Virus record (IMG/VR): IMGVR_UViG_3300043436_004687
Coordinates: 62,001 to 126,000 of that record
Strand: one strand, 5' to 3'
DNA: 64,000 nucleotides
Below the pieces are notes generated by a model. That model was not told the origin of the DNA. It saw only the letters and a list, made by a program, of their open reading frames with translations, and made no database searches. Below, in pieces: positions 895 to 61,443 of the stretch. The translations under genes were made by a program, and so were the position numbers. Within the stretch, counting starts at the first letter, position 1. Each line of letters begins with the position of its first letter.

Positions 895-1095
895 AAAATT
901 TTATGGGTATATTAATACCCTGTTATTATAAATATAAGAATAAATTTAAAAAGTTCAATATTATTATGTTAAATTTAGTTAAAATTATACATTATGGTTT
1001 TAAATCTATTTAATTGTTTATGTTTGTATAAGATTGTTTAGATAATTAGTTTCTGTTACTAACCCTTCGTTTTAATAGCACTTCACCATATTTTG

Positions 1096-1179
1096 TAACC
1101 CTGACAAGATTCGAACTTGCAACCCATTGAGGGACAGCATTCTAAGTGCTGCGTGTATAGCCATTTCCACCACAGAGCC
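1096..1179 (-). tRNA. tRNA-Leu(UAG)
   Basis: Acceptor GGCTCTG/CAGGGTT, anticodon arm CAGCA-CTTAGAA-TGCTG, long variable arm, T loop GTTCGAATC; CCA not encoded. Confidence 0.9.
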
Positions 1180-28605: not shown

Positions 28606-28629
28606 AATAATAAATATCTTAAAATAAGA

Positions 28630-28820: not shown

Positions 28821-28829
28821 ATTTATTTG

Positions 28830-28900
28830 CTCTTCCATCCAGACTCGAACTGGAAATAACTGATTAACAGTCAGACGTGATACCATTTCACTATGAAAGA
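28830..28900 (-). tRNA. tRNA-Asn(GUU)
   Basis: Acceptor TCTTTCA/TGGAAGA, anticodon loop CTGTTAA, T loop GTTCGAGT. Confidence 0.9.
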
Positions 28901-29108
28901 ATTTATTTTTTTGTTAATTTCAGAATCTTTTGTTTAGTATTTTTCTACATATCATCTTCTAAGTATTTTTCTAAATTACCTTCATTTAATTTAGAAATAA
29001 TAGTATTAATAATTTCATCTCTTTTATTTTTTAAACTAGGGTTATTAAATATAAAAATTAAATCTACAAAATCACCAATTAATAAGGTTTGATTTTCAGT
29101 TAATACCA

Positions 29109-29516
29109 TTATTTGTCTTTAAGATTTTCTCTAACTAAACGTTTAATTATGTCTTTATTTTCCTCTAAACCATTTTTAGCTTTCTTCTCCATTTTTTCTA
29201 ATCTATCATAATAATCAACAAATTCTGAAACATGATCAGTGGCTATTTCTCTAGCTTTTTCAATATCATCAGTGTGTTCTAATTCGACACCAATACCTTT
29301 ATCTATTTGTTTATTTATTACTGAAATATCAACACCATATTTCTTAGCTAAATCACTAATCGTTAAATTATCAGCATTACCACCAACCAATTTATTTTCT
29401 TCATTTATATTAGCATGCAAGGCTGCCATATATTTATTAACATCACCCTTTGTACAACCAATTTTATCATTGGTCCCTTTATGAAAAATACATTTACCCC
29501 TAATTTCGTATTGCAT
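29109..29516 (-). CDS. DUF5661-like phage protein
   Basis: GIGVELEHT..AREIA.DH...YY.RL..ME. Confidence 0.7.
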   Translation of the reverse strand: MQYEIRGKCIFHKGTNDKIGCTKGDVNKYMAALHANINEENKLVGGNADNLTISDLAKKYGVDISVINKQIDKGIGVELEHTDDIEKAREIATDHVSEFVDYYDRLEKMEKKAKNGLEENKDIIKRLVRENLKDK

Positions 29517-29535
29517 AATTTTTAATTTATTTTTG

Positions 29536-29608
29536 TGTCCCTATCAGGATTCAAACCTGAAAAATTTGGTTAGAAGCCAAATATGATATTCATTTTCATC
29601 ATAAGGAC
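29536..29608 (-). tRNA. tRNA-Arg(UCU)
   Basis: Acceptor GTCCTTA/TAGGGAC, anticodon arm TTTGG-CTTCTAA-CCAAA. Confidence 0.88.
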
Positions 29609-29613
29609 TTTTG

Positions 29614-29698
29614 AAGAGAGTGAAGGAATCGAACCCTATTCAGTTTCCCGAATGCACGGATTTCAAGTCCGCTTGACCACCGTTGGTCACCACTCTCC
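29614..29698 (-). tRNA. tRNA-Ser(UGA)
   Basis: Acceptor GGAGAGT/ACTCTCT, anticodon loop CTTGAAA, long variable arm, T loop GTTCGATT. Confidence 0.9.
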
Positions 29699-29705
29699 AA
29701 ATTTA

Positions 29706-29918
29706 TTACTTCATAATAGAACAATAAATTGCACCTATTATTACCGAGTAAAGAATAAATAAAAATATTAAATTTATAAAATTATAAAAATAATCATAAT
29801 AATTTAAATTCCTAAATTTTAAATATTCTTTTATTGTTACACCAAAAAACCTTGCTTGAGCCCAAATAGTTAAAAAAACCATTATTAAGGTAACAATAAT
29901 TAAAAAACCTAATTTCAT
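29706..29918 (-). CDS. hypothetical membrane protein
   Basis: Two hydrophobic helices; promoter -7 box at 29937..29944. Confidence 0.6.
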   Translation of the reverse strand: MKLGFLIIVTLIMVFLTIWAQARFFGVTIKEYLKFRNLNYYDYFYNFINLIFLFILYSVIIGAIYCSIMK

Positions 29919-29989
29919 ATTAATTTATTTTTTTTGCAAATATAAATTTAATTTACTTATCTAACAATAAAATTAATTTTATATTTTAG

Positions 29990-30061
29990 CACAGATAGTA
30001 AGCCAACGCACTTACAACTCAAGTTTTGGAGACTCGTATGATACTCTTTCACCATATCTGT
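29990..30061 (-). tRNA. tRNA-Trp(CCA), atypical T loop
   Basis: Acceptor ACAGATA/TATCTGT, anticodon loop CTCCAAA, T arm GTAAG-TGCGTTGG-CTTAC. Confidence 0.75.
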
Positions 30062-30065
30062 ATTT

Positions 30066-30143
30066 TGGGGTGGTATATCGGGATTGAACCGATGACCCTC
30101 GGTACCACAAACCGATGCTCTAACCAACTGAGCTAATACCACC
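30066..30143 (-). tRNA. tRNA-His(GUG) with encoded G-1, C73 and CCA
   Basis: G-GTGGTAT/ATACCAC-C-CCA, anticodon arm TCGGT-TTGTGGT-ACCGA. Confidence 0.92.
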
Positions 30144-30376: not shown

Positions 30377-31671
30377 CTGTTTAAAATCACATAATAAAAT
30401 ATAATTATTTTAACCAAGTGTTACCACTTGACTTGGATAAACAGCAATACCCTCTATTCCATTAGCAAACGCATTTGGAACTGCTTTTCTTAATATGTTA
30501 TAACTACCATTTACATCAGAGTTAATAAATTTATTTTCACCTCTAACTTTATACATACCTCGTTTATATCTATATCCACTAAACCCATTTGAATATTTAT
30601 CACCGTAAACTGGTATATAATCTAAATTTAAAAAACTAGCCTTGCTTGTATAACTTTCTTCTTGAAATAATACTTTAATACCGCTTAATAACCCTTTATA
30701 TTGTAACATACTAACTAATTTATCAAATGGTATTGAAACAAAATTTTGGTTGTTTCTCTTTCCCATATTAATTTCTTGTTTCCAAAAATTATTATGTCCA
30801 ACAATAATTGTGTTTAATTCATTTTCAAGACACCAATCAATTAAATATTTACTACTTTGATGCAAATAAGTCTCAATTTTATTATTCCTAATTAAACCTA
30901 ATTTAATTATTTTAGTGGTAGCTTTTCTTGATTTTAATTCAGCTAATTTTTTATTGAAAAATTGATTTATACTTTTTAATGGTCTACCATTAATAATGAT
31001 TGGTTTAACACCATTCTTATTTGAAGTTATAGTCATTAAATTATTTACCCCTAAATCAATAGAACAATAATTATCATTATTTTCTTTTAGTAATATGTTT
31101 TCTCTTTCATATACAATATTTATTTTAAATTTATTATAATATGGTTTAACTTGTACCTCAATTATTTTTTTATCTATATTTTTAACTTTAATTTGAATAT
31201 TTAAAGTTGATAAACCAATCAAACCGTTTTTAATATGTTTAGTTAAAACACTATTATCAATAAAAATAGCTGTAAATCTACCATCTTTTTTTAAATATTT
31301 AGGTAATTTTGGTTTACCTGTGAAACTATTTTTATTTGCTTTATATACTTTAGTTGCTTCAAAAAATCCTTTCCAATTTGCATCAAGTGTTCTAATAACA
31401 CATCTACTAACTCTAGTTGGTAATGCCTTATATTCTGGCAAATCTTTACAAATATTAAACAAATATAGTTTTCTTAACCAATTACCATTAGATATAAACT
31501 CATTTCTTATAATATAGTTTACAGAATTATATAAGTTTTTAGTTTTGAATGTTAATTCATCTAATTCTTTTGTTTTATTTACAATATGTGATTCAACTAA
31601 TTTCATTGTGTATTAATATATACTCCTTTATTATAAATATAAAACATTTTTTAAAAAAATTCAATAATTAC
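30377..31671 (-). mobile_element. non-autonomous tnpB-only element
   Basis: Ends GTAATT... and ...AAACAG resemble the IS607 ends; removal restores an ORF. Confidence 0.55.
30410..31606 (-). CDS. tnpB: TnpB (no zinc finger)
   Basis: CSIDLG, EESYTSK, NSDVNG. Confidence 0.9.
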   Translation of the reverse strand: MKLVESHIVNKTKELDELTFKTKNLYNSVNYIIRNEFISNGNWLRKLYLFNICKDLPEYKALPTRVSRCVIRTLDANWKGFFEATKVYKANKNSFTGKPKLPKYLKKDGRFTAIFIDNSVLTKHIKNGLIGLSTLNIQIKVKNIDKKIIEVQVKPYYNKFKINIVYERENILLKENNDNYCSIDLGVNNLMTITSNKNGVKPIIINGRPLKSINQFFNKKLAELKSRKATTKIIKLGLIRNNKIETYLHQSSKYLIDWCLENELNTIIVGHNNFWKQEINMGKRNNQNFVSIPFDKLVSMLQYKGLLSGIKVLFQEESYTSKASFLNLDYIPVYGDKYSNGFSGYRYKRGMYKVRGENKFINSDVNGSYNILRKAVPNAFANGIEGIAVYPSQVVTLG

Positions 31672-32051
31672 GAAGTTTTATCTTCATACAAAACAACCTT
31701 AATTTTTAAACATTTTTGTTTAGCATAACTAACTAAATCCCCAATTACCTTAGATTTACCATCCCAAAAACAAATCAAAGCATCTGCATAATCAACTATT
31801 TCTTTATTTCTAATTGAAACTGCTGTTAAGTTATATTTATACCAATCTGGCGGGAAATCTTTTATTCTATAATTATTTTCTTTAGCCCAAATTTCACCAA
31901 ATTTATCAGGACCTTGAAAACATTTACATGAAATAACTTCAATTTCAGTTTTATTTTTAAGCATAAAATCACAAGTATCCTTTAATAATTTATAATCATT
32001 AAATCGTCTACCCCCAGTAATAATTACCTTAAACATATATTTTATTATCAT
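31668..32051 (-). CDS. SLOG/YspA-like (DUF2493) protein
   Basis: VIITGGR.F.DY, RN...V..AD..I.FWDGKS. Confidence 0.8.
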   Translation of the reverse strand: MIIKYMFKVIITGGRRFNDYKLLKDTCDFMLKNKTEIEVISCKCFQGPDKFGEIWAKENNYRIKDFPPDWYKYNLTAVSIRNKEIVDYADALICFWDGKSKVIGDLVSYAKQKCLKIKVVLYEDKTS

Positions 32052-32388
32052 TTGTTACCAAAGTATCAAACTTATTAAAATCAACATCAACCTCATTCAT
32101 TTCCCAATAAGGATTGTTTCGTGGGTTGTATTTTATTTCAATTAAATCTTCAACATTAATTGGTTTGGATAGGATTTCCAATTTTTCACATTCAACCCAA
32201 GCACAAACTCTTTTATTAGCACCATCGAATATTTCTTCAGAAGTTTTTTTATTATTTTTCAATAAACAATTAGTTAATCTAAATGTAACCTCATTCGGAT
32301 TATAATAAAATATTAGTTTACTAGGATATGTTACCTTCCATTTTTTAAAATTTTTACCCCTGGATAAATTAAATCTAACTTTAAACAT
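32029..32388 (-). CDS. hypothetical protein
   Basis: 119-aa ORF overlapping both neighbours. Confidence 0.7.
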   Translation of the reverse strand: MFKVRFNLSRGKNFKKWKVTYPSKLIFYYNPNEVTFRLTNCLLKNNKKTSEEIFDGANKRVCAWVECEKLEILSKPINVEDLIEIKYNPRNNPYWEMNEVDVDFNKFDTLVTNDNKIYV

Positions 32389-32830
32389 TTTGAATTATTT
32401 CCCTTATTTTCATTATTAATCTACCAAGATGGTTTTCACCTAAATTTGGGTTAGTATTCAAATCAACACCCCAAAATAAATCGTTGTGATAATTACCCTC
32501 TTGTATATTTTGGTTACCAGTTTCAATTAACTTACTCCTAAAAGGTTCTTTATTGAATTTTAATGAGAGACATTCCTCCATAACTTTCAGTTTTATATTA
32601 TCCCAATTATCTACAAATGGTTCCATATTTATTCGTTCTTGAGATAACTTTTTAATATTATATGGGGTTATTGTTTTACTAGTACAAAGTTCTTTCCAAT
32701 CAATAGAATTAAATTTTTCACTCATATAAACATGTTCAACTGATTGGAAAGTTCTACCCTTGTAAGTTATTTCAACCAGAGCCATATTAGATAACCACCT
32801 AAATTCTGGGTTTTTGAATGAATGGATCAT
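32381..32830 (-). CDS. NADAR (YbiA-like) domain protein
   Basis: WLSN, F.SVEH, KF, L..TG, D.FWG, G.N.LGRL.M..R. Confidence 0.9.
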   Translation of the reverse strand: MIHSFKNPEFRWLSNMALVEITYKGRTFQSVEHVYMSEKFNSIDWKELCTSKTITPYNIKKLSQERINMEPFVDNWDNIKLKVMEECLSLKFNKEPFRSKLIETGNQNIQEGNYHNDLFWGVDLNTNPNLGENHLGRLIMKIREIIQNV

Positions 32831-33984
32831 TAAATTAATTTTTTAAATTCTTCAATTTCTAATTTATTTACCATTTTACCAACTTCTGGACCAGATACAT
32901 TATATTTGTTAATCACATCCTGACCACTAATACTTAATTTATACTTAATAAAAGCATTTAAGAGATTATTATCTATTTCATGAACTAAATGTCCAAACCT
33001 TCTTAATTGTTCATCAGATAATCTTATGTTTGATTGTAATTTCTTAGCTAATGGTGCGTTTTCAATTGTTAAACCCAATAAAGAAACTAAAAATGAAATT
33101 GATTTTACTTCCTCACTTGAATAGGTAAGAGTATTTAACTGTTTTTTTAATAAATCAACAGAATTATTTCTCAATAAAAAAGCTAATAGAATAACATAAT
33201 CCTTTTCTTCAATAAAATCACTATCAACATTCAACCCCCTAAATATTTCTTTAAAGAGATCATATCTTTTATATAAATCCAATAAAAATTTGATTGATTG
33301 TGCTGATTGAATTGATTTTAATAATTCATCTCTAATTCTTTCATTTGAAACTCCGTTTAAACTAGAATTTTTTAATAATTGTTTATCAACATCCTCATCA
33401 ATTTTTGAGTTATATCTAGCACTAAACCTACAAAATCTTAAAATCCTTAGTGGGTCTTCTTCAAATCTATCTTCTGCTTTACCAACAGTTCTAACAATAT
33501 TATGTTTAATATCACTAATACCACCAACCAAATCAATTATTTCACCCTTATCAATGTCATAATAAAGAGCGTTGCAAGTAAGATCTCTTCTTTCAGCATC
33601 GGTGTTTATTGAAACACCTAATTTAACTTCTGGGTGTCTTCCACTAGAATCTGAACGCATAGTTGCTATTTCATATTCATCATTATCGGTGAAAACATTG
33701 ATAACACCGAACGACTTCCCAGTGGCTAATGTTTTATAACCAGATTGTTGTAACATATTTTCAACACTATCTGGTAAAGCATCGGTAACCAAATCATAAT
33801 CTTTTATTTTTTTCCCCAATAAAGAATCTCTAACGGCCCCACCAACAATAAAAATAGAATAATTATTATCTTTAAATAATTTATTCATTTTTTTTATATC
33901 TTCTGGTACATTTATAGGGAATTTTAATCTAATTTCCCCATTTAAAGCCTCATTAAGCCTTTGCTTTATAAAATTTTTAATCAT
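32830..33984 (-). CDS. cca: CCA-adding tRNA nucleotidyltransferase (class II)
   Basis: VGGAVRD, DYD, RRDLT.NAL, EDPLRILR, ERI..EL. Confidence 0.9.
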   Translation of the reverse strand: MIKNFIKQRLNEALNGEIRLKFPINVPEDIKKMNKLFKDNNYSIFIVGGAVRDSLLGKKIKDYDLVTDALPDSVENMLQQSGYKTLATGKSFGVINVFTDNDEYEIATMRSDSSGRHPEVKLGVSINTDAERRDLTCNALYYDIDKGEIIDLVGGISDIKHNIVRTVGKAEDRFEEDPLRILRFCRFSARYNSKIDEDVDKQLLKNSSLNGVSNERIRDELLKSIQSAQSIKFLLDLYKRYDLFKEIFRGLNVDSDFIEEKDYVILLAFLLRNNSVDLLKKQLNTLTYSSEEVKSISFLVSLLGLTIENAPLAKKLQSNIRLSDEQLRRFGHLVHEIDNNLLNAFIKYKLSISGQDVINKYNVSGPEVGKMVNKLEIEEFKKLI

Positions 33985-34051: not shown

Positions 34052-35382
34052 CGTTCATTAAAACTTATGAAAATCTAGGATTCTCACTTATCCCAATTTC
34101 TATAGATTAACTCTATATGGGTGAACGGCAACACCCTCTATTCCGTCAGCAAAAGCATTCGGAACTGCTTTTTTAAGTATATTATAACTTCCATTTACGT
34201 CAGCATTAATAAGTGTATTACTCGCAGATTGAAATAACCCTCGCTTGATTCGTTTACCTACGTAAACCTCATGTTTAGTTATTTTTTCATTATCTAAAAA
34301 TGAACACTTACTGGTATAACTCTCTTCATGTGTTATAAAATTAATTCCGTGTTTCTCACATTTATATGTAAGCATTTGAATTATTTTATAATAAGGGATC
34401 TGAACAAAGTTCTGGTTGTTGACTCTACCAATATTAATACCTTGTTTCCAATTCTCATTATAGCCAACAACAAGTGTATTTAATTCATTCTGTAAACAGA
34501 ATTTAACAAGATAATCAGTTGATTTATGTAAGTAATCATTTACTTTACAATCTCTTTTAAAAGTTAACTTCTGAATACGTTTAGATGTCTTTACATTTTT
34601 AGGTAATGCGCTTTGGTAATTAGATTTTTGTTTATTGTAAAATTGATTTATGGATTTTAATGGTCTACCGTTAACTACTACAGGTTTAGTTCCTGCCTTG
34701 TTTGATGTTATAGTCATTAAATTGTTAAGTCCTAAATCAACTGAACTATAATGTTTATTATCTTTCTTTAAAGGTTGTTCTTTATGGTCATATATTATAT
34801 TGATTTTAAATTTATTTGTTCTTGTGGGGATTACTTGCACTTCGATTAATTTACCAGTTGTTTGTAATGGTATTCTTAATTTAAGTGAAGATAATCCAAT
34901 TTTACCATTTTTAGGTTTAAGTATTGCTGTTTCATAAAACAAGGCAGTAAACTTTCCATTTTTAGGTAAATACTTGGGTAAATTAGGTTTAGCTTTAAAC
35001 AGTTGCTTATTAGCTCTCCATTTTTTAATACAAGAGAAGAATGATTGCCAGTTAGCATCTAAAGTTCTAAGAACACCACGAGCAATACGTACTGGTAGAC
35101 ACTTATATTCTTCAATATCTTTACAGATGGTAAACATATCGAATTTAGAAATGTATTTACCAGTAGAAATAAATTCGTTACGGATAATGTAATTAGCTTT
35201 ATTATAAAGGTTTTTACATTTAAACGTAATTTGGTTTAGTTCGATAGACTGATTAATGATATGTGATTCAACTAGCAGCATTTAATAAGTGTAATAATTT
35301 TCTTTACTCTACATATAAATATATAGAAAAATGTAAAAGTTTGATTTAGATAAAGAATAAATTATTAAATAATGTTAATAAC
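34052..35382 (-). mobile_element. non-autonomous tnpB-only element (ends approximate)
   Basis: Left end GTTATTAAC resembles IS607 GTAGTTAAC; right end ...TGAACG|G. Confidence 0.45.
34100..35281 (-). CDS. tnpB: TnpB, paralogue of 30410..31606
   Basis: SSVDLG, EESYTSKCS, NADVNG; shared VESHI N-terminus. Confidence 0.9.
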   Translation of the reverse strand: MLLVESHIINQSIELNQITFKCKNLYNKANYIIRNEFISTGKYISKFDMFTICKDIEEYKCLPVRIARGVLRTLDANWQSFFSCIKKWRANKQLFKAKPNLPKYLPKNGKFTALFYETAILKPKNGKIGLSSLKLRIPLQTTGKLIEVQVIPTRTNKFKINIIYDHKEQPLKKDNKHYSSVDLGLNNLMTITSNKAGTKPVVVNGRPLKSINQFYNKQKSNYQSALPKNVKTSKRIQKLTFKRDCKVNDYLHKSTDYLVKFCLQNELNTLVVGYNENWKQGINIGRVNNQNFVQIPYYKIIQMLTYKCEKHGINFITHEESYTSKCSFLDNEKITKHEVYVGKRIKRGLFQSASNTLINADVNGSYNILKKAVPNAFADGIEGVAVHPYRVNL

Positions 35383-37492: not shown

Positions 37493-37530
37493 AAATTCTT
37501 TTAATATAAATAGAAAAAAACCTTAATTAA

Positions 37531-38532: not shown

Positions 38533-38563
38533 CAAATATATAACTTATTTTTATTCTTGCAAA
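38533..38563 (-). promoter_or_regulatory. Bacteroidota-type promoter
   Basis: TTTG-19 nt-TATATTTG. Confidence 0.65.
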
Positions 38564-39576
38564 TTATTTTCTCTAATTTTTTCTAATAATTTTAATTCAG
38601 TTTCACTAATATCATCAAATTCTAATAATTCCAATATTATATACATATCACCCCTAGAATTGGAGTTGTAAACTTTCATACCCTTACCTTTGACCCTAAG
38701 ATTTGAGTTTATCTTACTATTTTTGGGTATTGTAATCTTAATTTTAAGACCTTCTATAGTATTAATTTCTTTTTCACACCCTAAAATTAAATCATAATAT
38801 TTTAATTTTAATTTACAAATTAAATTATCACCTTGTCTCTCAAATTCCTTATGCCTTACTTCATTAATAATAACCTCTAAATCACCGTGATTACCTGATT
38901 TTATCTTATGGCCCTTACCATTCAATATTAACCTATTACCACCATAAACACCAATTGGTATGTTTATTTCTTCCTCTATAGTTTCATCTACTTTACCCGA
39001 TTTACAATTACCACATTTAGTTTTATATGTTTTACCAGTTTGATTACAACTTTGACAAGGCTTTTGTTGGATGAATTGTTGGTTACCCATTTGGAATACT
39101 TCGCTTTTAATACCCTGACCATTACAAGACTTACAAGTTTCTTTTTCACCACCACTACCGTTACAAGTATTACAATCATTAGTGATTTTATAAGTAACTT
39201 TTTTATTCACTCCATTAAAAATATCTTCTAATGAAAGGTTGAATTGAATTCTAGCATTTTGTCCCTTTTCTACTGGTTGTCTTTGAGAATATCTATTTCC
39301 TCTATTAAACATTTGATTAAATATATCATTCATATCAAATCCATCAAATCCGTTTGAATTTTCTTGGTGGCCGAATTTATCATAATGAGCTCTTTTTTTA
39401 GGGTCCGATAAATATTCGTTAGCTTCAGCTATTTCTTTAAATTTTTCTTCAGCTTCTTTATTGTCTGGATTTAAATCTGGATGAAATTTTTTAGATAAAT
39501 TTCTATAAGCTTTTTTTATTTCTCTTTCATTAGCGGTTTTTTCTAAACCAAGAATTTCATAATAATCTCTTTTCAT
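38551..39576 (-). CDS. dnaJ: DnaJ chaperone
   Basis: J domain with HPD, four CxxCxG-like repeats, C-terminal GD.YI. Confidence 0.95.
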
Positions 39577-47982: not shown

Positions 47983-49347
47983 TTAGTAACCTTGAACACT
48001 TTTAGGTCTGTTTTTATTATTTGCTATAGTTAATCCTCTAGCTGCTTCATGGTCTGTTGAATTTTTAGTTTTAGACCAATCTTTTATTTCTTTTTGTTTA
48101 GCAGCATATTCAGCATCTAAATCTTCGTTTACATTATTTTCAATTATATTAGTAATCATTTGAGTTAATTCAACAGCTAATTTAGGGTTTTGTAATTCAG
48201 TTGAATTTATAAATTCTTGAGGAGATTTATCATATCTTAACATAGTACCTCGATAATAACTATAACTACCTTTATTATTTTCAACTTCATCAACTACCTT
48301 ATAAATGCCTAATGATTTATTAGATGGGTAATAATAAAACATAAAATCACCTTTTTTAACTTGTGGAAAATGATGTTCATATTGATAGGTATTATCTTTA
48401 ATTTTAACTTTCCCAAAATCATCTTTACCTTTAATTTTAAAGACAAAATTAGTATTACCAAATTTCATTTCCTGACCTTCCTTAATTATGGCCTTAGCTT
48501 TATCCCAAACCTTCGTAAAATTAGTTTCCTCAGCCAATCTTTCAGCGCTATTTAACCTACCAGAAGTATCACTTGATTTAAACCCCATAAGATGTTTAAT
48601 CTTATCCATTGATTCATTTACAAGTTTTTTGTTTTCAGCTTTAAGAACAATAGCTTGACCTTCATTTACAGTCCCTTCCCATCTAATTCTATAAGTTTCA
48701 TTAATGTCAGCCATTTCAAAGACCTTTTTATCAACTTTATATGTTTCTGGAATAAGATTGATGGCATTTTCTAAACCATTGAATTCTTTTTTATAATTCA
48801 GTCTTTTAATACCCTCAAGAGCAACTTTTCTTTTATTAGCAATCTTTTTAGTATCTTTAGGTAAAACTTCAACATCATCACCAAATTGAACTATTGGGGT
48901 GATTGAATCATTTCTCTTTTTTGTAGATTTTTTTATTGTTTTAACCAAATTTTTAGCAAAATCTTTAGTTGATCCACCAAAAGTTGGTTCTGAATTATCT
49001 TTATTACCCATTTTACTATCCCCAACTATAGCCATTTCAGCTCTTTCTTTGAATTTTTCATCTGGTTCATTATCATATCTTGTCATTTCAAGACCATTTC
49101 TAATTTCAACCTCATCGTGAATTTCTTTATCTGATTCACTATAATTATATTTTACTGGTTCAATAGCATTCTTATCTTCTTTTTTAGAAGATTTATCATA
49201 CTCACCCATTTTTTTATCAACTTCTTTGTAATAATCTTTATTGATATTATCCTCTTCTTTTTGAGTTTTCTCAGTAGAGACTAAACCTTTTGGTTTTTCT
49301 TCTGAAATTAAATTTGTTAATTTCAATTTAATTAAATCTTTATTCAT
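47983..49347 (-). CDS. probable virion/internal head protein
   Basis: Multiple (I/L/V)xE motifs; domain duplicated in the downstream gene. Confidence 0.55.
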   Translation of the reverse strand: MNKDLIKLKLTNLISEEKPKGLVSTEKTQKEEDNINKDYYKEVDKKMGEYDKSSKKEDKNAIEPVKYNYSESDKEIHDEVEIRNGLEMTRYDNEPDEKFKERAEMAIVGDSKMGNKDNSEPTFGGSTKDFAKNLVKTIKKSTKKRNDSITPIVQFGDDVEVLPKDTKKIANKRKVALEGIKRLNYKKEFNGLENAINLIPETYKVDKKVFEMADINETYRIRWEGTVNEGQAIVLKAENKKLVNESMDKIKHLMGFKSSDTSGRLNSAERLAEETNFTKVWDKAKAIIKEGQEMKFGNTNFVFKIKGKDDFGKVKIKDNTYQYEHHFPQVKKGDFMFYYYPSNKSLGIYKVVDEVENNKGSYSYYRGTMLRYDKSPQEFINSTELQNPKLAVELTQMITNIIENNVNEDLDAEYAAKQKEIKDWSKTKNSTDHEAARGLTIANNKNRPKSVQGY

Positions 49348-50384
49348 TATAGTTTATTTGAATTTCTTTCTATTATAGTTTTAACCTCTTCAATAGTTTT
49401 ACCAGTCTTATTAGCAACTTCTAAATATAAATTTTCTTTAAGTTTAACGACATTATCAACAGCACCTTGACTACATTTACCTTCTTGAGCCTCTTTGTTG
49501 TTGTTTAATTTTGTACAATCATCGAATTCAACACCAATAAGATTATCTTCCAAGCCTTCCTTCACAACAGATTCAGTAGAAGTAGAACCAAATGCCATTT
49601 CTTTTAACTTTGTAACTCTAGCTGAAGCATCGTATTTTTTATTTATGGCTCTAGCAATATTATTAGCTTCAACATATGCTTGTTTTTCATCACTTGCATG
49701 CACATACATATCCATTTCTACAACAAATCTACTTAAAGATAATTTATCTAACTCGGTAATATTATTTTTAAGGATTTTACCCTTTTCAAATGCTGGTTTT
49801 TTACTAAACCTAGCATTGTTCTTATCTTTAGCTAAAAATGCTGGTTGTTCATAAGAACCACCCACAGAAGCTGTCGTTGTTTCTTCGGCTAAATCATTTT
49901 CCACCACATCTGGAGTTGGTTCATCTTTTGTTATGACTTTACCACCATTTTTCATATCATAACGTTTTTCAACCAATATATTGTAAAGTCTTTTTAAACC
50001 ACCATTTCTTAATTTAAGGAAAAACTCTTTTTTAGGGGCTAATTTTATTACAGCATCTGCACCTAAACCAGTAGCAGTAATTAAACCCATACTAGAAAAT
50101 AATGTTATAATATCACCCCAAGTAACACCCAACTTAACCCAAAATGGATCTAAACCTTTTTGAGATGGGTTAGTCATTATATGTTTTACTAATTCTTTAA
50201 AATGAGTTAAAAATTCAGCAGTTGATATTAAAGTATCCACATCCTCACTAATACCCTCATTGATTGGTTTAAAAAGTCTATTATATTGCTCCTCCGAAAT
50301 TTTAATAACTTTGTTAGGTTTTATTGCATCGTGTTTTCTCAACATTTCAACCTGAGTTTCAGTTAATTTTATTCTTTTACTCAT
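49347..50384 (-). CDS. probable virion/internal head protein
   Basis: TATTTATA motif upstream; many (I/L)xE segments (KLTE, LAEE, VKE). Confidence 0.5.
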   Translation of the reverse strand: MSKRIKLTETQVEMLRKHDAIKPNKVIKISEEQYNRLFKPINEGISEDVDTLISTAEFLTHFKELVKHIMTNPSQKGLDPFWVKLGVTWGDIITLFSSMGLITATGLGADAVIKLAPKKEFFLKLRNGGLKRLYNILVEKRYDMKNGGKVITKDEPTPDVVENDLAEETTTASVGGSYEQPAFLAKDKNNARFSKKPAFEKGKILKNNITELDKLSLSRFVVEMDMYVHASDEKQAYVEANNIARAINKKYDASARVTKLKEMAFGSTSTESVVKEGLEDNLIGVEFDDCTKLNNNKEAQEGKCSQGAVDNVVKLKENLYLEVANKTGKTIEEVKTIIERNSNKL

Positions 50385-50421
50385 TTAAATTATTTTATAT
50401 CTATAAATATAAAAATATAAC

Positions 50422-54589: not shown

Positions 54590-56833
54590 CTATTTGAGCA
54601 TTAATTTTGAGATGTGATTTATCTTATTGATTGTTATTAAGTTATCAGCCCAATTTTTAACCTCTTCTTTGTGGGTTATAAAGAAAACAATATCAAACAT
54701 GGCCTTTATTTTCTCAAACATAGGTTTAATCAATGGTATATTTTCTTCAGCAACCGTACCACTAATAACCTCATCAAATGTTATAAAATTAGGCATTGGT
54801 AGATGTGATAATTTACCCAAAACGCATCTTAATGCAATACTAGAAACGGTCTTCTCAAAACCACTACCAGATTTTAAAGGTTGTTCAATACCATCTTTAC
54901 TGATTAAATACTCCACTTCATTTTTTGAATTAATGATAAGCTCCAATTCAAAATCACAAACATCATCCATAAGTCTAACTAATTCTGAATTTATAATAGG
55001 TAAAACAGACCTTAAAACAAGTTTACTAATACCTTTTTTCCCCATCATTTCAATATAAACTTTAAAAATCTTCTCTAATTCTTCTTCAACTTTAATTTTT
55101 TTAAGTATTAATTCATTATTTAAAATAGATTTATCTTTATCCTCTAATAACAATTCCGTTGTAGTAATGAATCGATTAGAATCATCCCTTTCTTTTTCTT
55201 TGACTAGAATATCGGTTTTTACTAAAGAAACTTCGACATCGACATTACTATTAAATGTGATTGAATTCTTATTTTGTTCATATTTTTTTAAATCACTATT
55301 TTTAGATTTTATTTTTTCCCTAAGTCCATTTAATTCAACTTCTAACCTTTCTTTTTTCAATTCAAAGTTATTCTTTTTATCAACTTTAACTTTGGTTTCA
55401 TTTAAAACATCGATCTTACCTTTTAAATCTATAATAATTTTATTAATTTTCGACAATTCTTTGTGTTTATCATCTAATAAACCATTATTTTTTTTAATAT
55501 CTTCTGAGTGATCTACATTATCTAAAGGTTTTGAACATGTTGGGCAGAACTCACCATTGACAAGTTGATCAACCAACTCATTTAATTTTAATATTTCAGA
55601 ATCTAAAATTATTTTCTTAGAATTTTGCTCATTTAATGTTTTATTTAAATTTTGATATTCATTTTCATTATACTCTACATTACCTATAAGTTGTATTTCT
55701 TTAACTAAATCATCTATCTGTTGTTTAACAGATTTCCCAGTTATTGTTATTTTATCAACATCATCTTTTAAAGTTAGTGGATTTAACTGAGTAATAACAA
55801 CATCAATAGTGTGTTTAGAAGATAATAATTCATCTTTTTTATTATTTAAATTTACTAACTCATTATTAATTAATAATAAATTATTTTTTTCATTTTTTAA
55901 TAATTCTTTATTTGTATTGATGTCTTCTTTAGCTGTTGAAATTTCTTCCAGTAAAGTTGTTTCATTATATATGTTAGTTTGTTTAGTTTTAGAAAAGGAA
56001 TTATACATTTCTCTAACAGCCTTTTCTTTTAAGTCTAAAATTTCTAAACCAATAAACCTGGTTAATAACTTACCACTTTCAGTTGGTGAACTATCAATTA
56101 AATCTTCTAGATTTTTAGCGGTTGCTAATATAGTTATGTCAAAATCTTTTTCATTACCAACTATCTTTTCTATTTCTAATGAGGTTTTTTTAGCATCCTC
56201 ATCATTCATTAAGATTTCTTCACCATCTGGAAGAATTTCAAAATAGTTAACATTATTTTTTATATTAAAGCCACCCTCCCTTTTAGAACTTCTAGTCATC
56301 TTTCTTTCGATAATAATTTCTTTATTATCGAATCCTACCATACCTCTAACACTCAATTCATTTTTATCCGAAAATAAGTTAAATATTTGCTCGTTTTTAT
56401 CTGTTTTTGTTGTTTTACCAAAAAATAAAAATTTAACAGAATCAACTGAAAATGTTGTATTATGTGAAACTATACCATTTGAATAATATTGGTGGACATC
56501 ATCTACTTGAATATCGAATAAATCATTTTTTTCAGGTAGAATTTTAATATTTTCTACTTCACTTAATCCATCTATGGTTTCTATTAAATCACCAATTTTA
56601 ATTTCATTTAAATTAATGAAATCACCATTATTATTTTTTAATTTATGTAAATCAGCACCTTCAACATACATACCATTTTTTAAATCACATCTATAAACCT
56701 CGGCATTTTTTTCAGTTATACCACACCAACTAATATTATGGTAACCATAAGGATTTTTAACTTTAAACCCCAAATCACCATACTTTTCATATATTTTATT
56801 TAAATCACCAATTTTAATTTCTTTATTCATCAT
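54590..56833 (-). CDS. sbcC: split intein C-part (aa 1-125) fused to the C-extein of an SbcC/gp46-like ATPase
   Basis: Block B GADLH, blocks F/G DLFDIQV..YYSNGIVSHN|T; then coiled coil, CPTC hook, SGSGFE signature, FDE Walker B, ITH. Confidence 0.92.
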   Translation of the reverse strand: MMNKEIKIGDLNKIYEKYGDLGFKVKNPYGYHNISWCGITEKNAEVYRCDLKNGMYVEGADLHKLKNNNGDFINLNEIKIGDLIETIDGLSEVENIKILPEKNDLFDIQVDDVHQYYSNGIVSHNTTFSVDSVKFLFFGKTTKTDKNEQIFNLFSDKNELSVRGMVGFDNKEIIIERKMTRSSKREGGFNIKNNVNYFEILPDGEEILMNDEDAKKTSLEIEKIVGNEKDFDITILATAKNLEDLIDSSPTESGKLLTRFIGLEILDLKEKAVREMYNSFSKTKQTNIYNETTLLEEISTAKEDINTNKELLKNEKNNLLLINNELVNLNNKKDELLSSKHTIDVVITQLNPLTLKDDVDKITITGKSVKQQIDDLVKEIQLIGNVEYNENEYQNLNKTLNEQNSKKIILDSEILKLNELVDQLVNGEFCPTCSKPLDNVDHSEDIKKNNGLLDDKHKELSKINKIIIDLKGKIDVLNETKVKVDKKNNFELKKERLEVELNGLREKIKSKNSDLKKYEQNKNSITFNSNVDVEVSLVKTDILVKEKERDDSNRFITTTELLLEDKDKSILNNELILKKIKVEEELEKIFKVYIEMMGKKGISKLVLRSVLPIINSELVRLMDDVCDFELELIINSKNEVEYLISKDGIEQPLKSGSGFEKTVSSIALRCVLGKLSHLPMPNFITFDEVISGTVAEENIPLIKPMFEKIKAMFDIVFFITHKEEVKNWADNLITINKINHISKLMLK

Positions 56834-57839
56834 TATTTTTTAAAAAATTAATACATTTATTTAATTCTACTTCTGGATTACTTCTATATTCCGAATCCCA
56901 TATTATTAAAACCTCAAAACCTTCTTTTTTAGCTAAGTTTATTTTTTTTTCATCTCTATCCCAAATCTCTTTAGCGGTTAATTTTTTATTAAATGGGTTT
57001 GGGAAACTGTCTGCATTATAAAGTTTAGGATTCCCATGAAATAAATCGCCATTATATTCAATAATTTTTTTATTTTTTAAATCAGTAAAATCATATCTAA
57101 AAAAACTTCTTTTATCTTTTATCATTAACTCACCACCCATTTCACTAAATTTAATATAATTTAAATCGCTCAAATTATAAATTTTAATTAATTCTCTAAA
57201 CATTTTTTGAGATATTTCAGAACAACCTACTTTTAATTTGCCATTTCTAAATAAACTTTCTTGCCATTTAATTTGTCTTTCATTCCAAACTTTTAAACCC
57301 TCTTCTTCCCCATACTTTTCTATGCATTTTGATAAATTAAATGTAGTTTGTCTTTCAGATTGTTTTATTTTAGCTTCTTCTTTATTAAACCCTTTTTTTA
57401 ACCAAAATTCGATATTAGCACTACCCATTTTACCACAAGTACTTCTTAACTTTTCCCTACTATTCCATTTTAACAATCCTTCTTTTTCACCAAATCTAGC
57501 AATACAGCCTTTTAAAGAGCACATTTTTTGGCCGTCTGTTTGATCTTTAGCTTCCTTATCAGAATAACCTCTACTAGTCCAATATTCAATATTCGTTGGT
57601 TGTAACGTCTTAACATGTTTTATTGCCTCTTCTTCATTTAAACCTCTTTGTATCCAATATTTTATAGAATAAGCCGACCCTTTTGCAATTGAAACCCCAC
57701 TATTTTTTAATCTATTAGTAATTACCTCTGGATCAACATTAAACTTATCTGCAATAAATCTTGTTGATTTTAACTCAATTAAATATAAATTAACCATTTC
57801 ATTTAATTGTTCTTCTGTAAATTTAATTTTATTCGCCAT
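56823..57839 (-). CDS. free-standing Vsr-like/PD-(D/E)XK homing endonuclease with internal repeats
   Basis: C-terminal IIEYNGDLFHGNP..W.RD..K...LIIWDSE; three YW..RG-type repeats. Confidence 0.8.
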   Translation of the reverse strand: MANKIKFTEEQLNEMVNLYLIELKSTRFIADKFNVDPEVITNRLKNSGVSIAKGSAYSIKYWIQRGLNEEEAIKHVKTLQPTNIEYWTSRGYSDKEAKDQTDGQKMCSLKGCIARFGEKEGLLKWNSREKLRSTCGKMGSANIEFWLKKGFNKEEAKIKQSERQTTFNLSKCIEKYGEEEGLKVWNERQIKWQESLFRNGKLKVGCSEISQKMFRELIKIYNLSDLNYIKFSEMGGELMIKDKRSFFRYDFTDLKNKKIIEYNGDLFHGNPKLYNADSFPNPFNKKLTAKEIWDRDEKKINLAKKEGFEVLIIWDSEYRSNPEVELNKCINFLKNNDE

Positions 57840-57897
57840 TATATCTATTTTAAAATAAATATAACCGACTAATTAAAAAGGCAAATAGATTTAAATT

Positions 57898-60882: not shown

Positions 60883-60951
60883 TTAATATTATTTATTGCA
60901 AATATAAATTCAAAACTAATAAGTTGCAACTATTTATAGTAAAATAATAGA

Positions 60952-61443
60952 ATGAAAGAATTTATATTAAATAAACTAAGAGAGAATTTATTAAAAGAGT
61001 CTGTAGACACTAAAAAGTTGTTAGATTTAGCCTTAAAAAGTTCGTTTGAAAGTGAAAGTTTAGCTAAAAATTATATCACAAAATCAATAAAAGAATTAAA
61101 TAACTTACCTGATATAATTACATTATATAGGGTTATATTTGCTAAAGATAAAAATTCAATAAATCAAAAAGAAATTGGTAGTCATTATGTGATGAATAGA
61201 AGACAATTAGAACAAAGTCATCAATTTATTAGTCATGTGGGTGGTGGGACTCCATTTATGTTAACAGTAAAGGCACCAAAATCATTAATTGATTTGGAAA
61301 CTACGTTGGAGAACAAAGTAATGTACCCACATGAAAATGAAATAACTTTAAAGAATAAAGGTGTTGGTGCTAAGATAATTAGGATTGACTCATTTCAAGC
61401 GGAAGAAGATGGATTTGATGGATTTGATCCTTATGATTATTAA
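60952..61443 (+). CDS. hypothetical protein with ADP-ribosyltransferase-like motifs
   Basis: LYR ... GSH ... ENE spacing (R-S-ExE). Confidence 0.45.
   Translation: MKEFILNKLRENLLKESVDTKKLLDLALKSSFESESLAKNYITKSIKELNNLPDIITLYRVIFAKDKNSINQKEIGSHYVMNRRQLEQSHQFISHVGGGTPFMLTVKAPKSLIDLETTLENKVMYPHENEITLKNKGVGAKIIRIDSFQAEEDGFDGFDPYDY

What the first reader, a model, noticed from the sequence alone, without database searches (positions are those of the whole stretch)
32830..33984. Capsid-targeting-like N-terminal peptide on the CCA-adding enzyme and other proteins
Seen: a short basic/hydrophobic leader ending in (L/I)xE precedes the catalytic core: MIKNFIKQRLNE. Similar segments occur in 60952 (MKEFILNKLRE..LLKE), 36236 (KVRVALLE), 27775 (KNILLKE), 47983 (LTNLISE), 49347 (RIKLTE), restored 44966 (KKILKE) and the C-terminus of 29109 (IKRLVRE). 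Known: T4 internal proteins use a roughly 10-aa capsid-targeting sequence cleaved by gp21 after (I/L)xE. Inference: a tRNA-repair enzyme is packaged and injected to act before phage transcription.
Basis: partly seen in the sequence, partly recalled or inferred. Interest (0 to 1): 0.65.

Follow-up and report, generated by a model that had tools for sequence, protein, structure and literature searches.

The report
Shared leader peptide on phage enzymes
A 340-kb T4-like phage puts the same short, optional N-terminal tag on its tRNA CCA-adding enzyme and on unrelated enzymes; it is most likely an address label that loads them into the capsid for injection, but no virion data exist to prove it.

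Summary

Comparative data still rescue the core of the idea for two of the eight ORFs.
- The first ~17 residues of the CCA-adding enzyme (window 32830-33984, minus strand) are a modular leader.
- Cellular CCA enzymes lack the leader. So do some close phage homologues, which start exactly at the junction.
- In other phages the leader is replaced by other leader types.
- A model built only from non-CCA proteins recognises it: 19.2 bits against a best decoy of 9.6.
- The same leader heads the unrelated 163-aa protein at 60952. In relatives it heads ADP-ribosyltransferases, GNATs, kinases and a lysozyme fusion.

The phage has a T4-type head module with a gp21-family protease. The inferred capsid-protein maturation site is (L/I/M)NE|S/A. 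Leader genes are tenfold enriched for the promoter-like motif that precedes the protease, sheath and tube genes.

A T4-like capsid-targeting propeptide is therefore the best explanation (about 0.55). Packaging and cleavage remain unproven.

The parts
32830..33984 (-). Gene for a 384-aa class II tRNA nucleotidyltransferase (CCA-adding enzyme) with an N-terminal leader
   Evidence: PF01743 at 122 bits and PF12627 at 26 bits. phrog_2244 at E 8e-59. AF2 model with mean pLDDT 89.9. Foldseek TM 0.70 to solved CCA enzymes 6qy6 and 1miv.
33934..33984 (-). Leader, residues 1-17 (MIKNFIKQRLNEALNGE). L-N-E ends at residue 12 (nt 33949-33984). The junction to the core lies before IRLKF.
   Evidence: Type A leader: 19.2 bits on a model built from non-CCA proteins, against a best decoy of 9.6. 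The helix at residues 2-14 has pLDDT of about 59 or below 50, while the core is above 90. The boundary is fixed by leaderless homologues that start M(E)|KRIKF. Cellular enzymes lack the leader.
32833..33933 (-). Catalytic core and body of the enzyme, residues 18-384
   Evidence: Solved CCA enzymes align from query residues 19-37 onward. Invariant residues of the clade begin at E17/R19.
60952..61443 (+). 163-aa protein of unknown function carrying the same type A leader (MKEFILNKLRENLLKES, nt 60952-61002)
   Evidence: Hit by the CCA-family leader HMM at E 4e-5. Its body is not homologous to CCA. Its homologues keep the leader, followed by a linker of variable length. No Pfam or PHROG match.
60931..60938 (+). 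Promoter-like TATTTATA motif 13 nt upstream of ORF 60952
   Evidence: Located. The same motif is conserved before protease, sheath, tube and TerL orthologues in four genomes.
49347..50384 (-). 345-aa protein with a type-B-like N-terminus (MSKRIKLTETQVEML). The promoter-like motif lies at 50402-50410.
   Evidence: Orthologues in G004 and G005 keep MGKIKLTESQI although homology in the body is limited to the C-terminus. The type-B score is 9.4 bits, below the decoy maximum of 13.2. Support is weak.
47983..49347 (-). 454-aa protein whose N-terminus (MNKDLIKLKLTNLISE) is conserved in orthologues and ends in I/L-S/N-E
   Evidence: Orthologues in G004 and G005 shown. No leader-family match. No Pfam or PHROG match.
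56823..57839 (-). 338-aa protein with a type-B-like N-terminus (MANKIKFTEEQLNEM). The promoter-like motif lies at 57855-57862.
   Evidence: Type-B score of 12.8 bits, just under the decoy maximum of 13.2. Grouped with other type-B-like N-termini in the all-against-all comparison.
34100..35281 (-). TnpB-like gene directly upstream of the CCA gene. The promoter-like motif lies at 35314-35322.
   Evidence: OrfB_IS605 plus Cas12f1-like TNB domains. Motif position. In G001 and G005 the motif lies directly before the CCA gene itself.
32381..32830 (-). NADAR-domain gene; its start overlaps the CCA stop codon
   Evidence: PF08719 at 73.6 bits.
28829..30142 (-). Three tRNA genes (Asn 28829-28900, Arg 29535-29608, His 30066-30142) near the CCA gene
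   Evidence: ARAGORN and Rfam. Genome-wide, 11 of 13 tRNA genes lack an encoded CCA.

Best explanation
Residues 1 to about 17 of the CCA-adding enzyme are a modular N-terminal leader of the T4 capsid-targeting-sequence kind.

Proposed mechanism (inferred):
- Late in infection the leader docks the enzyme to the scaffolding core of the T4-type prohead.
- The gp21-family prohead protease then removes it after a (L/I)xE site. L-N-E12 is the candidate in this phage. In relatives the candidates are L-R-E11 and/or L-I-x-E16, right at the junction with the catalytic core.
- The mature enzyme is packaged with the DNA and enters the next host cell with it. There it could restore tRNA 3' ends before phage genes are expressed.
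- Unpackaged enzyme would mature the phage's own CCA-less tRNAs.

The same address system, in three or four interchangeable leader types, serves a set of unrelated single-domain enzymes in this clade of jumbo phages.

Shown here: modularity, sharing between unrelated proteins, the genome-specific leader type, the T4-type head module, and the link to the promoter motif. Inferred: docking, cleavage, packaging and injection.
For: 1. T4-type machinery is present.
- PF03420 protease at 80 bits and gp23 capsid protein at 203 bits.
- Protease, scaffold, capsid protein and portal lie together.
- By homology to T4 gp23, the capsid-protein site is FLMNE|S in this genome, LLNE|S in G004 and G005, LINE|A in G001 and LISE|A in Microcystis phage Mel-JY01.

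2. The leader is optional and has a sharp boundary.
- Over 100 homologues at 50-58% identity keep MKxxIKQILREGLIxE.
- Other homologues at 46-56% identity start M(E)|KRIKF with no leader.
- Still others carry a type B leader, a type C leader or a DUF5661-like domain instead.
- Cellular enzymes have only 29-38 residues before GGxVRD.
- Solved structures align from residue 19-37 onward.

3. The leader is shared by unrelated proteins.
- An iterated search of four genomes gives 22 N-termini above a decoy threshold that allows about 1-2 false hits.
- The bodies of these proteins are not homologous to each other.
- A model built without any CCA sequence scores CCA at 23.1 and 19.2 bits, against a best decoy of 9.6.
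- About 35 more carriers lie within 3 kb of CCA genes in other contigs.

4. The leader type follows the genome, not the protein family.
- CCA has type B in G001 and type C in L081, and its neighbours there carry types B and C.
- Elsewhere both CCA and its neighbours carry type A.

5. The cargo resembles known injected effectors.
- Two ART-PolyVal ADP-ribosyltransferases whose domain starts right after the leader.
- GNATs, one of them fused to a phage lysozyme; an AAA_33 kinase; an HD domain; a Tae4 amidase.
- T4 Alt is a packaged ART processed by gp21 (PMC5512222, PMC5694885). T4 internal proteins share only a 10-19-residue CTS (PMC9026906, PMC3012670).

6. Leader genes are co-regulated with virion genes.
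- 25 of 45 leader genes against 209 of 1935 other genes carry ATATTTAT/TATTTATA within 45 nt upstream (odds ratio 10.3, p 7e-13).
- That motif is conserved before protease, sheath, tube and TerL orthologues.

7. The AF2 model gives the leader helix low confidence and does not pack it confidently on the core.

8. Conservation is at the protein level. Codons at identical residues differ about as often as random expectation.
Against: - There is no virion proteome, no N-terminal sequence and no cultured member of the clade.
- In this phage the junction reads L-N-G-E|I, which is not (L/I)xE. Only L-N-E12 fits the rule, and cleavage there would leave ALNGE on the mature enzyme.
- This genome has few clear carriers: two of type A, plus two to four weaker ones.
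- The CCA gene here lacks the promoter motif directly upstream, because a TnpB gene intervenes.
- The gene lies among tRNA, NADAR and other non-structural genes, far from the head module.
- Eleven of 13 phage tRNAs need CCA addition, so a purely cytoplasmic role would be sufficient.
- The promoter motif also precedes TnpB and homing-endonuclease-like genes. Its timing is inferred only from the genes it precedes.
- In type B leaders, conservation continues past the ITE site.
- At least one type-B hit, a pterin dehydratase, is probably native domain sequence.
- Sequence similarity to the T4 CTS was not tested.
- The resemblance to the processed SPN3US gp53/54 N-terminus is not significant (6-7 bits).
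Confidence: 0.55

Rival explanations
1. The leader is a real modular tag, but for something other than capsid loading. Examples are docking of several phage enzymes onto a common hub or complex, a membrane or replication site, or a removable inhibitory or degradation tag that controls activity or half-life.
For: The evidence for modularity, sharing and genome-specific type fits any common receptor. The cargo is mostly enzymes that could act in the producing cell. The CCA enzyme has an obvious cytoplasmic job, since 11 of 13 tRNA genes lack an encoded CCA. Conservation in type B leaders runs beyond the putative cleavage site.
Against: - It does not explain why all four leader types carry (L/I)xE within residues 5-20, matching the inferred capsid-protein maturation site.
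- It does not explain the tenfold enrichment of the virion-gene promoter motif.
- It does not explain the parallel with T4 Alt and the internal proteins (PMC9026906, PMC5512222).
- No candidate hub was found.
Confidence: 0.25
2. The N-terminal segment is an integral part of this CCA-enzyme subfamily, for example an extra helix for tRNA binding or stability. Its likeness to other N-termini would then be coincidental.
For: The segment is conserved across more than 100 homologues. E17 and R19 are invariant or nearly invariant in the clade. Some cellular CCA enzymes also have N-terminal extensions of varied length.
Against: - Close homologues (46-56% identity) lack it and start exactly at the junction, or carry unrelated leaders.
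- A model trained without any CCA sequence finds it at 19-23 bits, against a best decoy of 9.6.
- AF2 gives it low confidence while the core is above 90.
Confidence: 0.05
3. The pattern is chance or composition: AT-rich codon usage and start-proximal codon preferences (MK..., A-rich codons), or a repeated DNA cassette, produce look-alike N-termini.
For: [LI]xE alone is at chance level. The proteome is rich in K, L, N, I and E. Many ORFs start with MK.
Against: - Decoys that also start with M and have the same composition reach at most 9.6 bits, against 19-35 bits for carriers.
- Similar N-terminal pairs exceed internal decoys several-fold in each of the four genomes.
- Codons at identical residues differ as often as random, so this is not a DNA repeat.
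- Upstream regions share only a short motif at variable spacing.
Confidence: 0.05

Closest known systems
T4 capsid targeting sequence (CTS) of internal proteins IPI, IPII and IPIII, and the N-terminal propeptide of Alt, removed by prohead protease gp21
   Same: - A short N-terminal peptide: 10-19 residues in T4 and about 11-17 here.
- It is shared by otherwise unrelated proteins of one phage.
- It ends in (L/I)xE.
- The phage has a gp21-family protease, a scaffold and a gp23-type capsid protein.
- The cargo includes ADP-ribosyltransferases, as Alt is in T4 (PMC9026906, PMC3012670, PMC5694885).
   Different: - Packaging and cleavage are not shown here.
- Sequence relatedness to the T4 CTS was not tested.
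- There are at least three or four leader types that swap between genomes.
- The cargo is mainly enzymes (CCA-adding enzyme, GNAT, kinase, HD, lysozyme) rather than small basic anti-restriction proteins.
- A CCA-adding enzyme as cargo did not turn up in the papers I searched.
Propeptides of ejection and inner-body proteins of phiKZ-like giant phages (SPN3US gp53/gp54, phiKZ gp93), cut by a gp21-like protease
   Same: N-terminal sequences are conserved between diverged paralogues. Several cleavage motifs ending in E lie close to the N-terminus. A role in head targeting has been proposed (PMC5694885). The 15-residue N-terminus printed for SPN3US gp53/54 looks like the type A leader by eye.
   Different: The likeness is not significant: 6-7 bits against a decoy maximum of 9.6. 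Those phages use A/S/G-x-E sites and mostly propeptides longer than 100 residues, and they have a different head architecture.
Polyvalent proteins of phages and conjugative elements (Iyer et al. 2017)
   Same: The enzymatic repertoire predicted to be delivered with the DNA overlaps: ART (PF18760 is named after them), GNAT, kinases, Pol-beta-superfamily nucleotidyltransferases, and lysozymes or peptidases (PMC5512222).
   Different: Here the domains are mostly separate small proteins, each with its own leader, not fused into one giant polypeptide. None is fused to MuF, portal or RNAP modules.
Phage-encoded CCA-adding enzymes of jumbo phages (tRNA maturation and repair)
   Same: A class II CCA-adding enzyme lies next to a phage tRNA set. 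This is common in jumbo phages and is read as tRNA 3'-end restoration (PMC7824862, PMC5852040).
   Different: An added N-terminal leader is shared with unrelated proteins. Matches to cultured-phage CCA enzymes start at query residues 7-44, mostly after residue 19, so they do not cover the leader.

Membership tests
T4-type capsid targeting sequence / gp21-processed propeptide | Short N-terminal segment (10-19/20 residues) that precedes, and is separable from, the mature protein | tested here: met
   The leader is about 17 residues long. Leaderless close homologues start at the junction. Cellular and solved enzymes lack it. The AF2 helix has low confidence.
T4-type capsid targeting sequence / gp21-processed propeptide | Ends in the protease's cleavage motif, (L/I)-x-E | tested here: met
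   L-N-E ends at residue 12. Relatives have L-R-E11 and L-I-x-E16. Caveats: the junction in this phage is N-G-E, and the motif alone is frequent (25.6% of ORFs).
T4-type capsid targeting sequence / gp21-processed propeptide | The phage encodes a gp21-family prohead protease with a scaffold-based T4-type prohead | tested here: met
   PF03420 at 80.3 bits. PF07068 at 203 bits. Module order is protease, scaffold-like acidic protein, capsid protein, portal.
T4-type capsid targeting sequence / gp21-processed propeptide | The same leader is shared by otherwise unrelated proteins of the phage | tested here: met
   ORF 60952 in this genome. 22 carriers in four genomes with non-homologous bodies. Independent model.
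T4-type capsid targeting sequence / gp21-processed propeptide | Sequence relatedness to the T4 IPIII/IPII/IPI CTS | not tested
   No T4 CTS sequence was obtained from a tool, and I did not type it from memory.
T4-type capsid targeting sequence / gp21-processed propeptide | The protein is present in virions with the propeptide removed, and the leader is sufficient to package a foreign protein | not testable with these tools
   The record is an uncultured metagenomic virus. No proteome is available.
T4-type capsid targeting sequence / gp21-processed propeptide | Physical affinity of the leader for the scaffolding core | tested here: inconclusive
   The complex prediction of the scaffold with CCA residues 1-40 gave no verdict.
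Class II CCA-adding enzyme (tRNA nucleotidyltransferase, Pol-beta superfamily) | PolyA_pol head domain with the GGxVRD / DxD nucleotidyltransferase signature | tested here: met
   PF01743 at E 2e-35 over residues 44-165. GGAVRD and DYD are visible in the translation.
Class II CCA-adding enzyme (tRNA nucleotidyltransferase, Pol-beta superfamily) | Full-length head-neck-body-tail fold | tested here: met
   The AF2 model has mean pLDDT 89.9. Foldseek gives TM 0.70 over 361-389 alignment columns to 6qy6, 7oqx and 1miv.
Class II CCA-adding enzyme (tRNA nucleotidyltransferase, Pol-beta superfamily) | CCA-adding specificity rather than A-adding, CC-adding or poly(A) polymerase | not testable with these tools
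   The best sequence and fold matches are CCA-adding enzymes, but poly(A) polymerases and A-adding enzymes also match.
Polyvalent proteins (Iyer et al. 2017) | Two to 15 disparate domains in one polypeptide, linked to virion or conjugation genes | tested here: not met
   The CCA enzyme and most carriers are single-domain proteins. Only L071:1265-2446 combines GNAT with lysozyme.

The most novel reading that the evidence does not exclude
A clade of uncultured 290-370-kb T4-like phages uses several interchangeable N-terminal 'address codes' to load its capsids with a large, fast-evolving arsenal of single-domain enzymes. The arsenal would include a CCA-adding enzyme, ADP-ribosyltransferases, acetyltransferases, kinases, an HD phosphohydrolase and wall hydrolases. 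If so, a ready-made tRNA 3'-end repair enzyme would be injected with the DNA. To my knowledge and in the papers I searched, that would be the first case of pre-packaged RNA repair as a counter-defence, and the leaders would be a sequence handle for finding injected effectors in metagenomes.
Probability: 0.4. Interest if true: 0.8.

Novelty: new variant of a known kind. Interest (0 to 1): 0.62.

Why it matters
If the leaders are capsid addresses, they give a simple sequence rule for listing the proteins that these giant phages inject. That class of protein is otherwise found only by virion proteomics of cultured phages.

The cargo list points to host takeover and counter-defence at the moment of entry. 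It includes ADP-ribosylation, acetylation, phosphorylation and tRNA end repair. A packaged CCA-adding enzyme would imply that hosts attack tRNA 3' ends early in infection, or that the phage needs its own CCA-less tRNAs working at once.

The leaders could also serve as packaging tags for protein delivery, as the T4 CTS does.

If the leaders turn out to be some other common tag, they would still define a previously undescribed sorting signal shared by dozens of phage enzyme families.

Tried and rejected
- **Megablast of 8 kb against cultured phages:** no match.
- **ART-PolyVal in the window's own genome:** none found. The control genomes gave nothing either, so this is uninformative.
- **Homologues of the 163-aa protein in five related genomes:** none found.
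- **Cluster names for NCBI-sourced homologues:** no organism names returned.
- **Complex prediction of the scaffold protein with CCA residues 1-40:** no verdict. It is not evidence either way.
- **Likeness of type A leaders to the processed SPN3US gp53/54 N-terminus:** only 6-7 bits, below the decoy maximum. Rejected as evidence.
- **Head region of Microcystis phage Mel-JY01:** no leader above threshold; best 9.4 bits.
- **Literature search for a virion-packaged CCA enzyme:** nothing relevant. No paper on Mel-JY01 is held.
- **DNA repeat or start-codon-context artefact:** rejected by the codon test and by the non-conserved upstream regions.
- **Leaders reflecting paralogy of whole proteins:** rejected, because the bodies are not homologous.
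- **A false hit:** the type-B hit on a pterin-4a-carbinolamine dehydratase overlaps the Pfam domain and is probably native sequence.
- I redid the step from stored hits by reference.
- **The big representative protein search:** not used, because no claim here needed it.
Full report
**Setting.** The window is bases 62001-126000 of a complete 339,635-bp virus record with direct terminal repeats and about 26% G+C. The genome carries a T4-type head module:
- a gp21-family prohead protease (PF03420, 80 bits; genome 232854-233582);
- a 488-aa acidic scaffold-like protein;
- a gp23-type major capsid protein (PF07068, 203 bits; 229515-231269);
- a portal protein.

The nearest cultured capsid proteins reach only 38-41% identity. 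They belong to Microcystis phage Mel-JY01 and Flavobacterium phage immuto. Megablast finds no cultured relative.

**The observation.** ORF 32830-33984 (minus strand) encodes a 384-aa class II CCA-adding enzyme that starts MIKNFIKQRLNE. Its AlphaFold model has mean pLDDT 89.9 and superposes on solved CCA-adding enzymes at TM 0.70.

- [LI]xE ending at residues 6-15 is found in 86 of 498 ORFs, against 73±7 for equal-sized internal windows.
- It is found in 26 of 102 ORFs of the window, and 25.6% of ORFs in four related genomes have it within residues 5-20.

Eight hits in a 64-kb window are therefore expected by chance.

**What is really there.** The N-terminus of the enzyme is nevertheless special. 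More than 100 homologues at 50-58% identity, on contigs of up to 372 kb, keep a leader of consensus MKxxIKQILRE-GLIxE directly before a conserved (E/K)RIKF strand.

An HMM of this leader finds one other N-terminus in the same genome: ORF 60952-61443 (MKEFILNKLRENLLKES). It scores E 4e-5 (18 bits); the best hit anywhere inside proteins is 10.5 bits.

I fetched three whole relatives: G001 (287 kb), G004 (363 kb) and G005 (353 kb). I then iterated the search against decoys made of internal segments that also start with M. This gave 22 N-termini above a threshold that allows about one or two false hits. Apart from orthologues, the bodies of these proteins are not homologous to each other.

A model built only from the non-CCA carriers ranks the CCA enzymes of G005 (23.1 bits) and of this genome (19.2 bits) as its best new hits. 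The best of 4955 decoys scores 9.6.

In each of the four genomes, an all-against-all comparison of N-terminal 14-mers shows several-fold more similar pairs than internal decoys do. It recovers expected controls, namely lipoprotein signal peptides and one paralogue family. It also reveals further leader types:
- type B, MKIIITESQLKxxI, on about 16 genes at 111-140 kb of G001;
- type C, MNLQENIQRIKEMMGLxxE;
- a fourth type, MKLxxIYxSLINE.

**Modularity.** Across 80 viral loci, CCA homologues at 46-58% identity fall into four groups:
- those with the type A leader;
- those with no leader at all, starting M(E)|KRIKF exactly at the junction;
- those with type B (L032 = G001) or type C (L081);
- those with a DUF5661-like N-terminal domain (L091, L093, L096).

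The G004 enzyme has the type A leader behind a GTG start. Chromosomal bacterial CCA enzymes have only 29-38 residues before GGxVRD and show nothing like the leader. Solved enzymes align from query residue 19-37 onward.

In the AlphaFold model the leader is a helix (residues 2-14) with pLDDT of about 59 or below 50, while the core from strand 18-21 onward is above 90.

The leader type follows the genome and not the protein family. Where CCA carries type B or C, its neighbours carry B and C. Everywhere else both carry type A. About 35 further non-CCA type A carriers lie within 3 kb of CCA genes.

The 163-aa family of ORF 60952 also keeps the leader, followed by a linker of variable length.

At positions with identical residues, the codons differ about as often as random codon choice predicts (33 against 39.5, 32 against 29.0, 57 against 70.7). 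Conservation therefore acts on the peptide and not on a DNA repeat. The upstream regions share only a short motif.

**Why a capsid address is the best reading.**

First, the protease rule appears to be kept. By homology to the T4 gp23 propeptide (65 residues; PMC5694885; alignment), the capsid-protein site reads:
- FLMNE|STTAD in this genome;
- HLLNE|STTAD in G004 and G005;
- YLINE|AAVAD in G001;
- LISE|ANRTG in Mel-JY01.

A second (I/L)(F/Y)E site lies eleven residues upstream in G000, G004, G005 and G001 (not in Mel-JY01). All four leader types contain (L/I)xE within residues 5-20. In type A it sits at residue 11 and again at about 16, at the junction.

Second, in T4 the internal proteins share nothing but a 10-19-residue CTS. 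It targets them to the scaffolding core and is removed by gp21. Alt, an ADP-ribosyltransferase, is likewise processed, packaged and injected (PMC9026906, PMC3012670, PMC5694885, PMC5512222).

Here the carriers include:
- two ART-PolyVal ADP-ribosyltransferases whose catalytic domain begins right after the leader;
- GNAT acetyltransferases, one fused to a phage lysozyme;
- an AAA_33 kinase, an HD phosphohydrolase and a Tae4-type amidase.

This is the repertoire that Iyer et al. predicted to be delivered with phage DNA in polyvalent proteins. Their list explicitly includes Pol-beta-superfamily nucleotidyltransferases (PMC5512222).

Third, a promoter-like motif, (C/T)ATATTTAT(A/T), lies a median of 15-17 nt before start codons. 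It is conserved in front of the protease, sheath, tube and large-terminase orthologues of all four genomes. It precedes 25 of 45 leader genes against 209 of 1935 other genes (odds ratio 10.3, p 7e-13). It lies directly before the CCA genes of G001 and G005 and before ORF 60952.

**Limits.**
- None of this shows packaging, cleavage or injection.
- In this phage the junction is L-N-G-E|I. Only L-N-E12 fits the rule.
- The CCA gene here is separated from the nearest promoter motif by a TnpB gene.
- It sits among tRNA, NADAR and SLOG genes, not among head genes.
- This genome has few clear carriers.
- Eleven of its 13 tRNA genes lack an encoded CCA, so a cytoplasmic maturation role is expected in any case.
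- The promoter motif also precedes TnpB and GIY-YIG-like genes. Its timing is inferred only from the genes it precedes.
- A prediction of the scaffold-leader complex gave no verdict.
- The eye-catching likeness to the processed N-terminus of SPN3US gp53/54 is not significant.

I put the capsid-targeting reading at about 0.55. A different common sorting or regulatory tag gets about 0.25. 'Integral part of the enzyme' and 'chance' get about 0.05 each.

- **49347** and its G004 and G005 orthologues share MxK(R)IKLTE(T/S)Q although their bodies have diverged. The score stays below the decoy maximum.
- **47983** keeps an N-terminus ending in I/L-S/N-E in orthologues.
- **36236 and 27775** have only the trivial motif. 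Both have the promoter motif upstream.
- **'Restored 44966'** follows a stop codon and has no start.
- **The C-terminal motif of 29109** lies in a DUF5661 protein and has no support.

**Comparison and novelty.** The system works like the T4 CTS with gp21. It meets the features of that system that can be tested here (see the membership table). It is a new variant rather than a new kind of system:
- the leader families are new;
- there are several interchangeable types;
- the cargo is much broader and enzymatic;
- a CCA-adding enzyme as cargo did not turn up in the papers I searched.

The catalytic part is an ordinary jumbo-phage CCA-adding enzyme (PMC7824862).

Noticed in passing
window 24447-25604, 30410-31606, 34100-35281, 42166-43392 (all minus strand): The 64-kb window holds at least four TnpB-like genes (OrfB_IS605 plus Cas12f1-like TNB domains), and the genome has more. 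Most copies carry the ATATTTAT promoter-like motif 22-33 nt upstream. One copy sits between that motif and the CCA gene, as if it had inserted into the gene's leader region.
   Followed up: partly
window 60931-60938, 50402-50410, 57855-57862, 35314-35322, 28610-28617, 37505-37512; genome-wide: A promoter-like motif, (C/T)ATATTTAT(A/T), lies a median of 15-17 nt before start codons. It is conserved before protease, sheath, tube and TerL orthologues in four related genomes. It is probably the virion-gene (late) promoter of this clade. TATTTATA is the reverse complement of the T4 late promoter TATAAATA (the T4 sequence is from my own knowledge).
   Followed up: partly
window 31668-32830 (minus strand): Three genes lie directly downstream of the CCA gene: NADAR (32381-32830), a mycobacteriophage L5 gp82-like protein (32029-32388) and a SLOG/YAcAr protein (31668-32051). 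This looks like a small block linked to NAD/ADP-ribose or nucleotide signalling.
   Followed up: no
window 29109-29516 (minus strand); L091, L093, L096: This is a DUF5661 protein. In some related phages a DUF5661-like domain (ELEHT motif) is fused to the N-terminus of the CCA enzyme at exactly the place of the leader.
   Followed up: partly
genome 24286-92142 and 224906-224977; window 1095-1179, 1515-1601, 28829-28900, 29535-29608, 30066-30142: The genome has 13 tRNA genes. Only tRNA-Asp and tRNA-His have an encoded 3' CCA; the other 11 need CCA addition.
   Followed up: yes
G001 (L011-L025), about 111-140 kb: A dense cluster of about 20 co-oriented genes, most with type B or C leaders. It includes the CCA enzyme, an HD-domain protein, a Tae4-like amidase and a P-loop kinase-like protein. 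It may be a 'cargo island'.
   Followed up: partly
genome 269556-294057, 51943-52392, 338948-339376 (outside the window): A family of 11 small paralogues (122-149 aa) shares the N-terminus MxEQLVSFETAKLAKEKGF / MNKEF(I/V)PYEQAL. Function is unknown.
   Followed up: no
several ORFs in G000, G004 and G005 (for example genome 7078-7389 and 36724-37617): Many phage ORFs start with lipoprotein-type signal peptides (MKKLLF...SC). This fits a didermic host; combined with the low G+C and the Flavobacterium-phage affinity of the capsid protein, that host is perhaps a member of the Bacteroidota.
   Followed up: no
window 38551-39576 and 15168-16562 (minus strand): The window also encodes a full-length DnaJ (J domain, zinc-finger and C-terminal domains) and an ATP-dependent DNA ligase.
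   Followed up: no
L143, L144, L145 (genome contigs): The closest 'bacterial or archaeal' hits to the CCA enzyme lie on contigs binned into Methanobacterium and Gammaproteobacteria MAGs (6.7 kb, 20.6 kb and, for L145, 170.7 kb). L143 and L144 carry the phage leader; L145 lacks it and starts at the junction. They are probably phage contigs mis-binned into MAGs.
   Followed up: no
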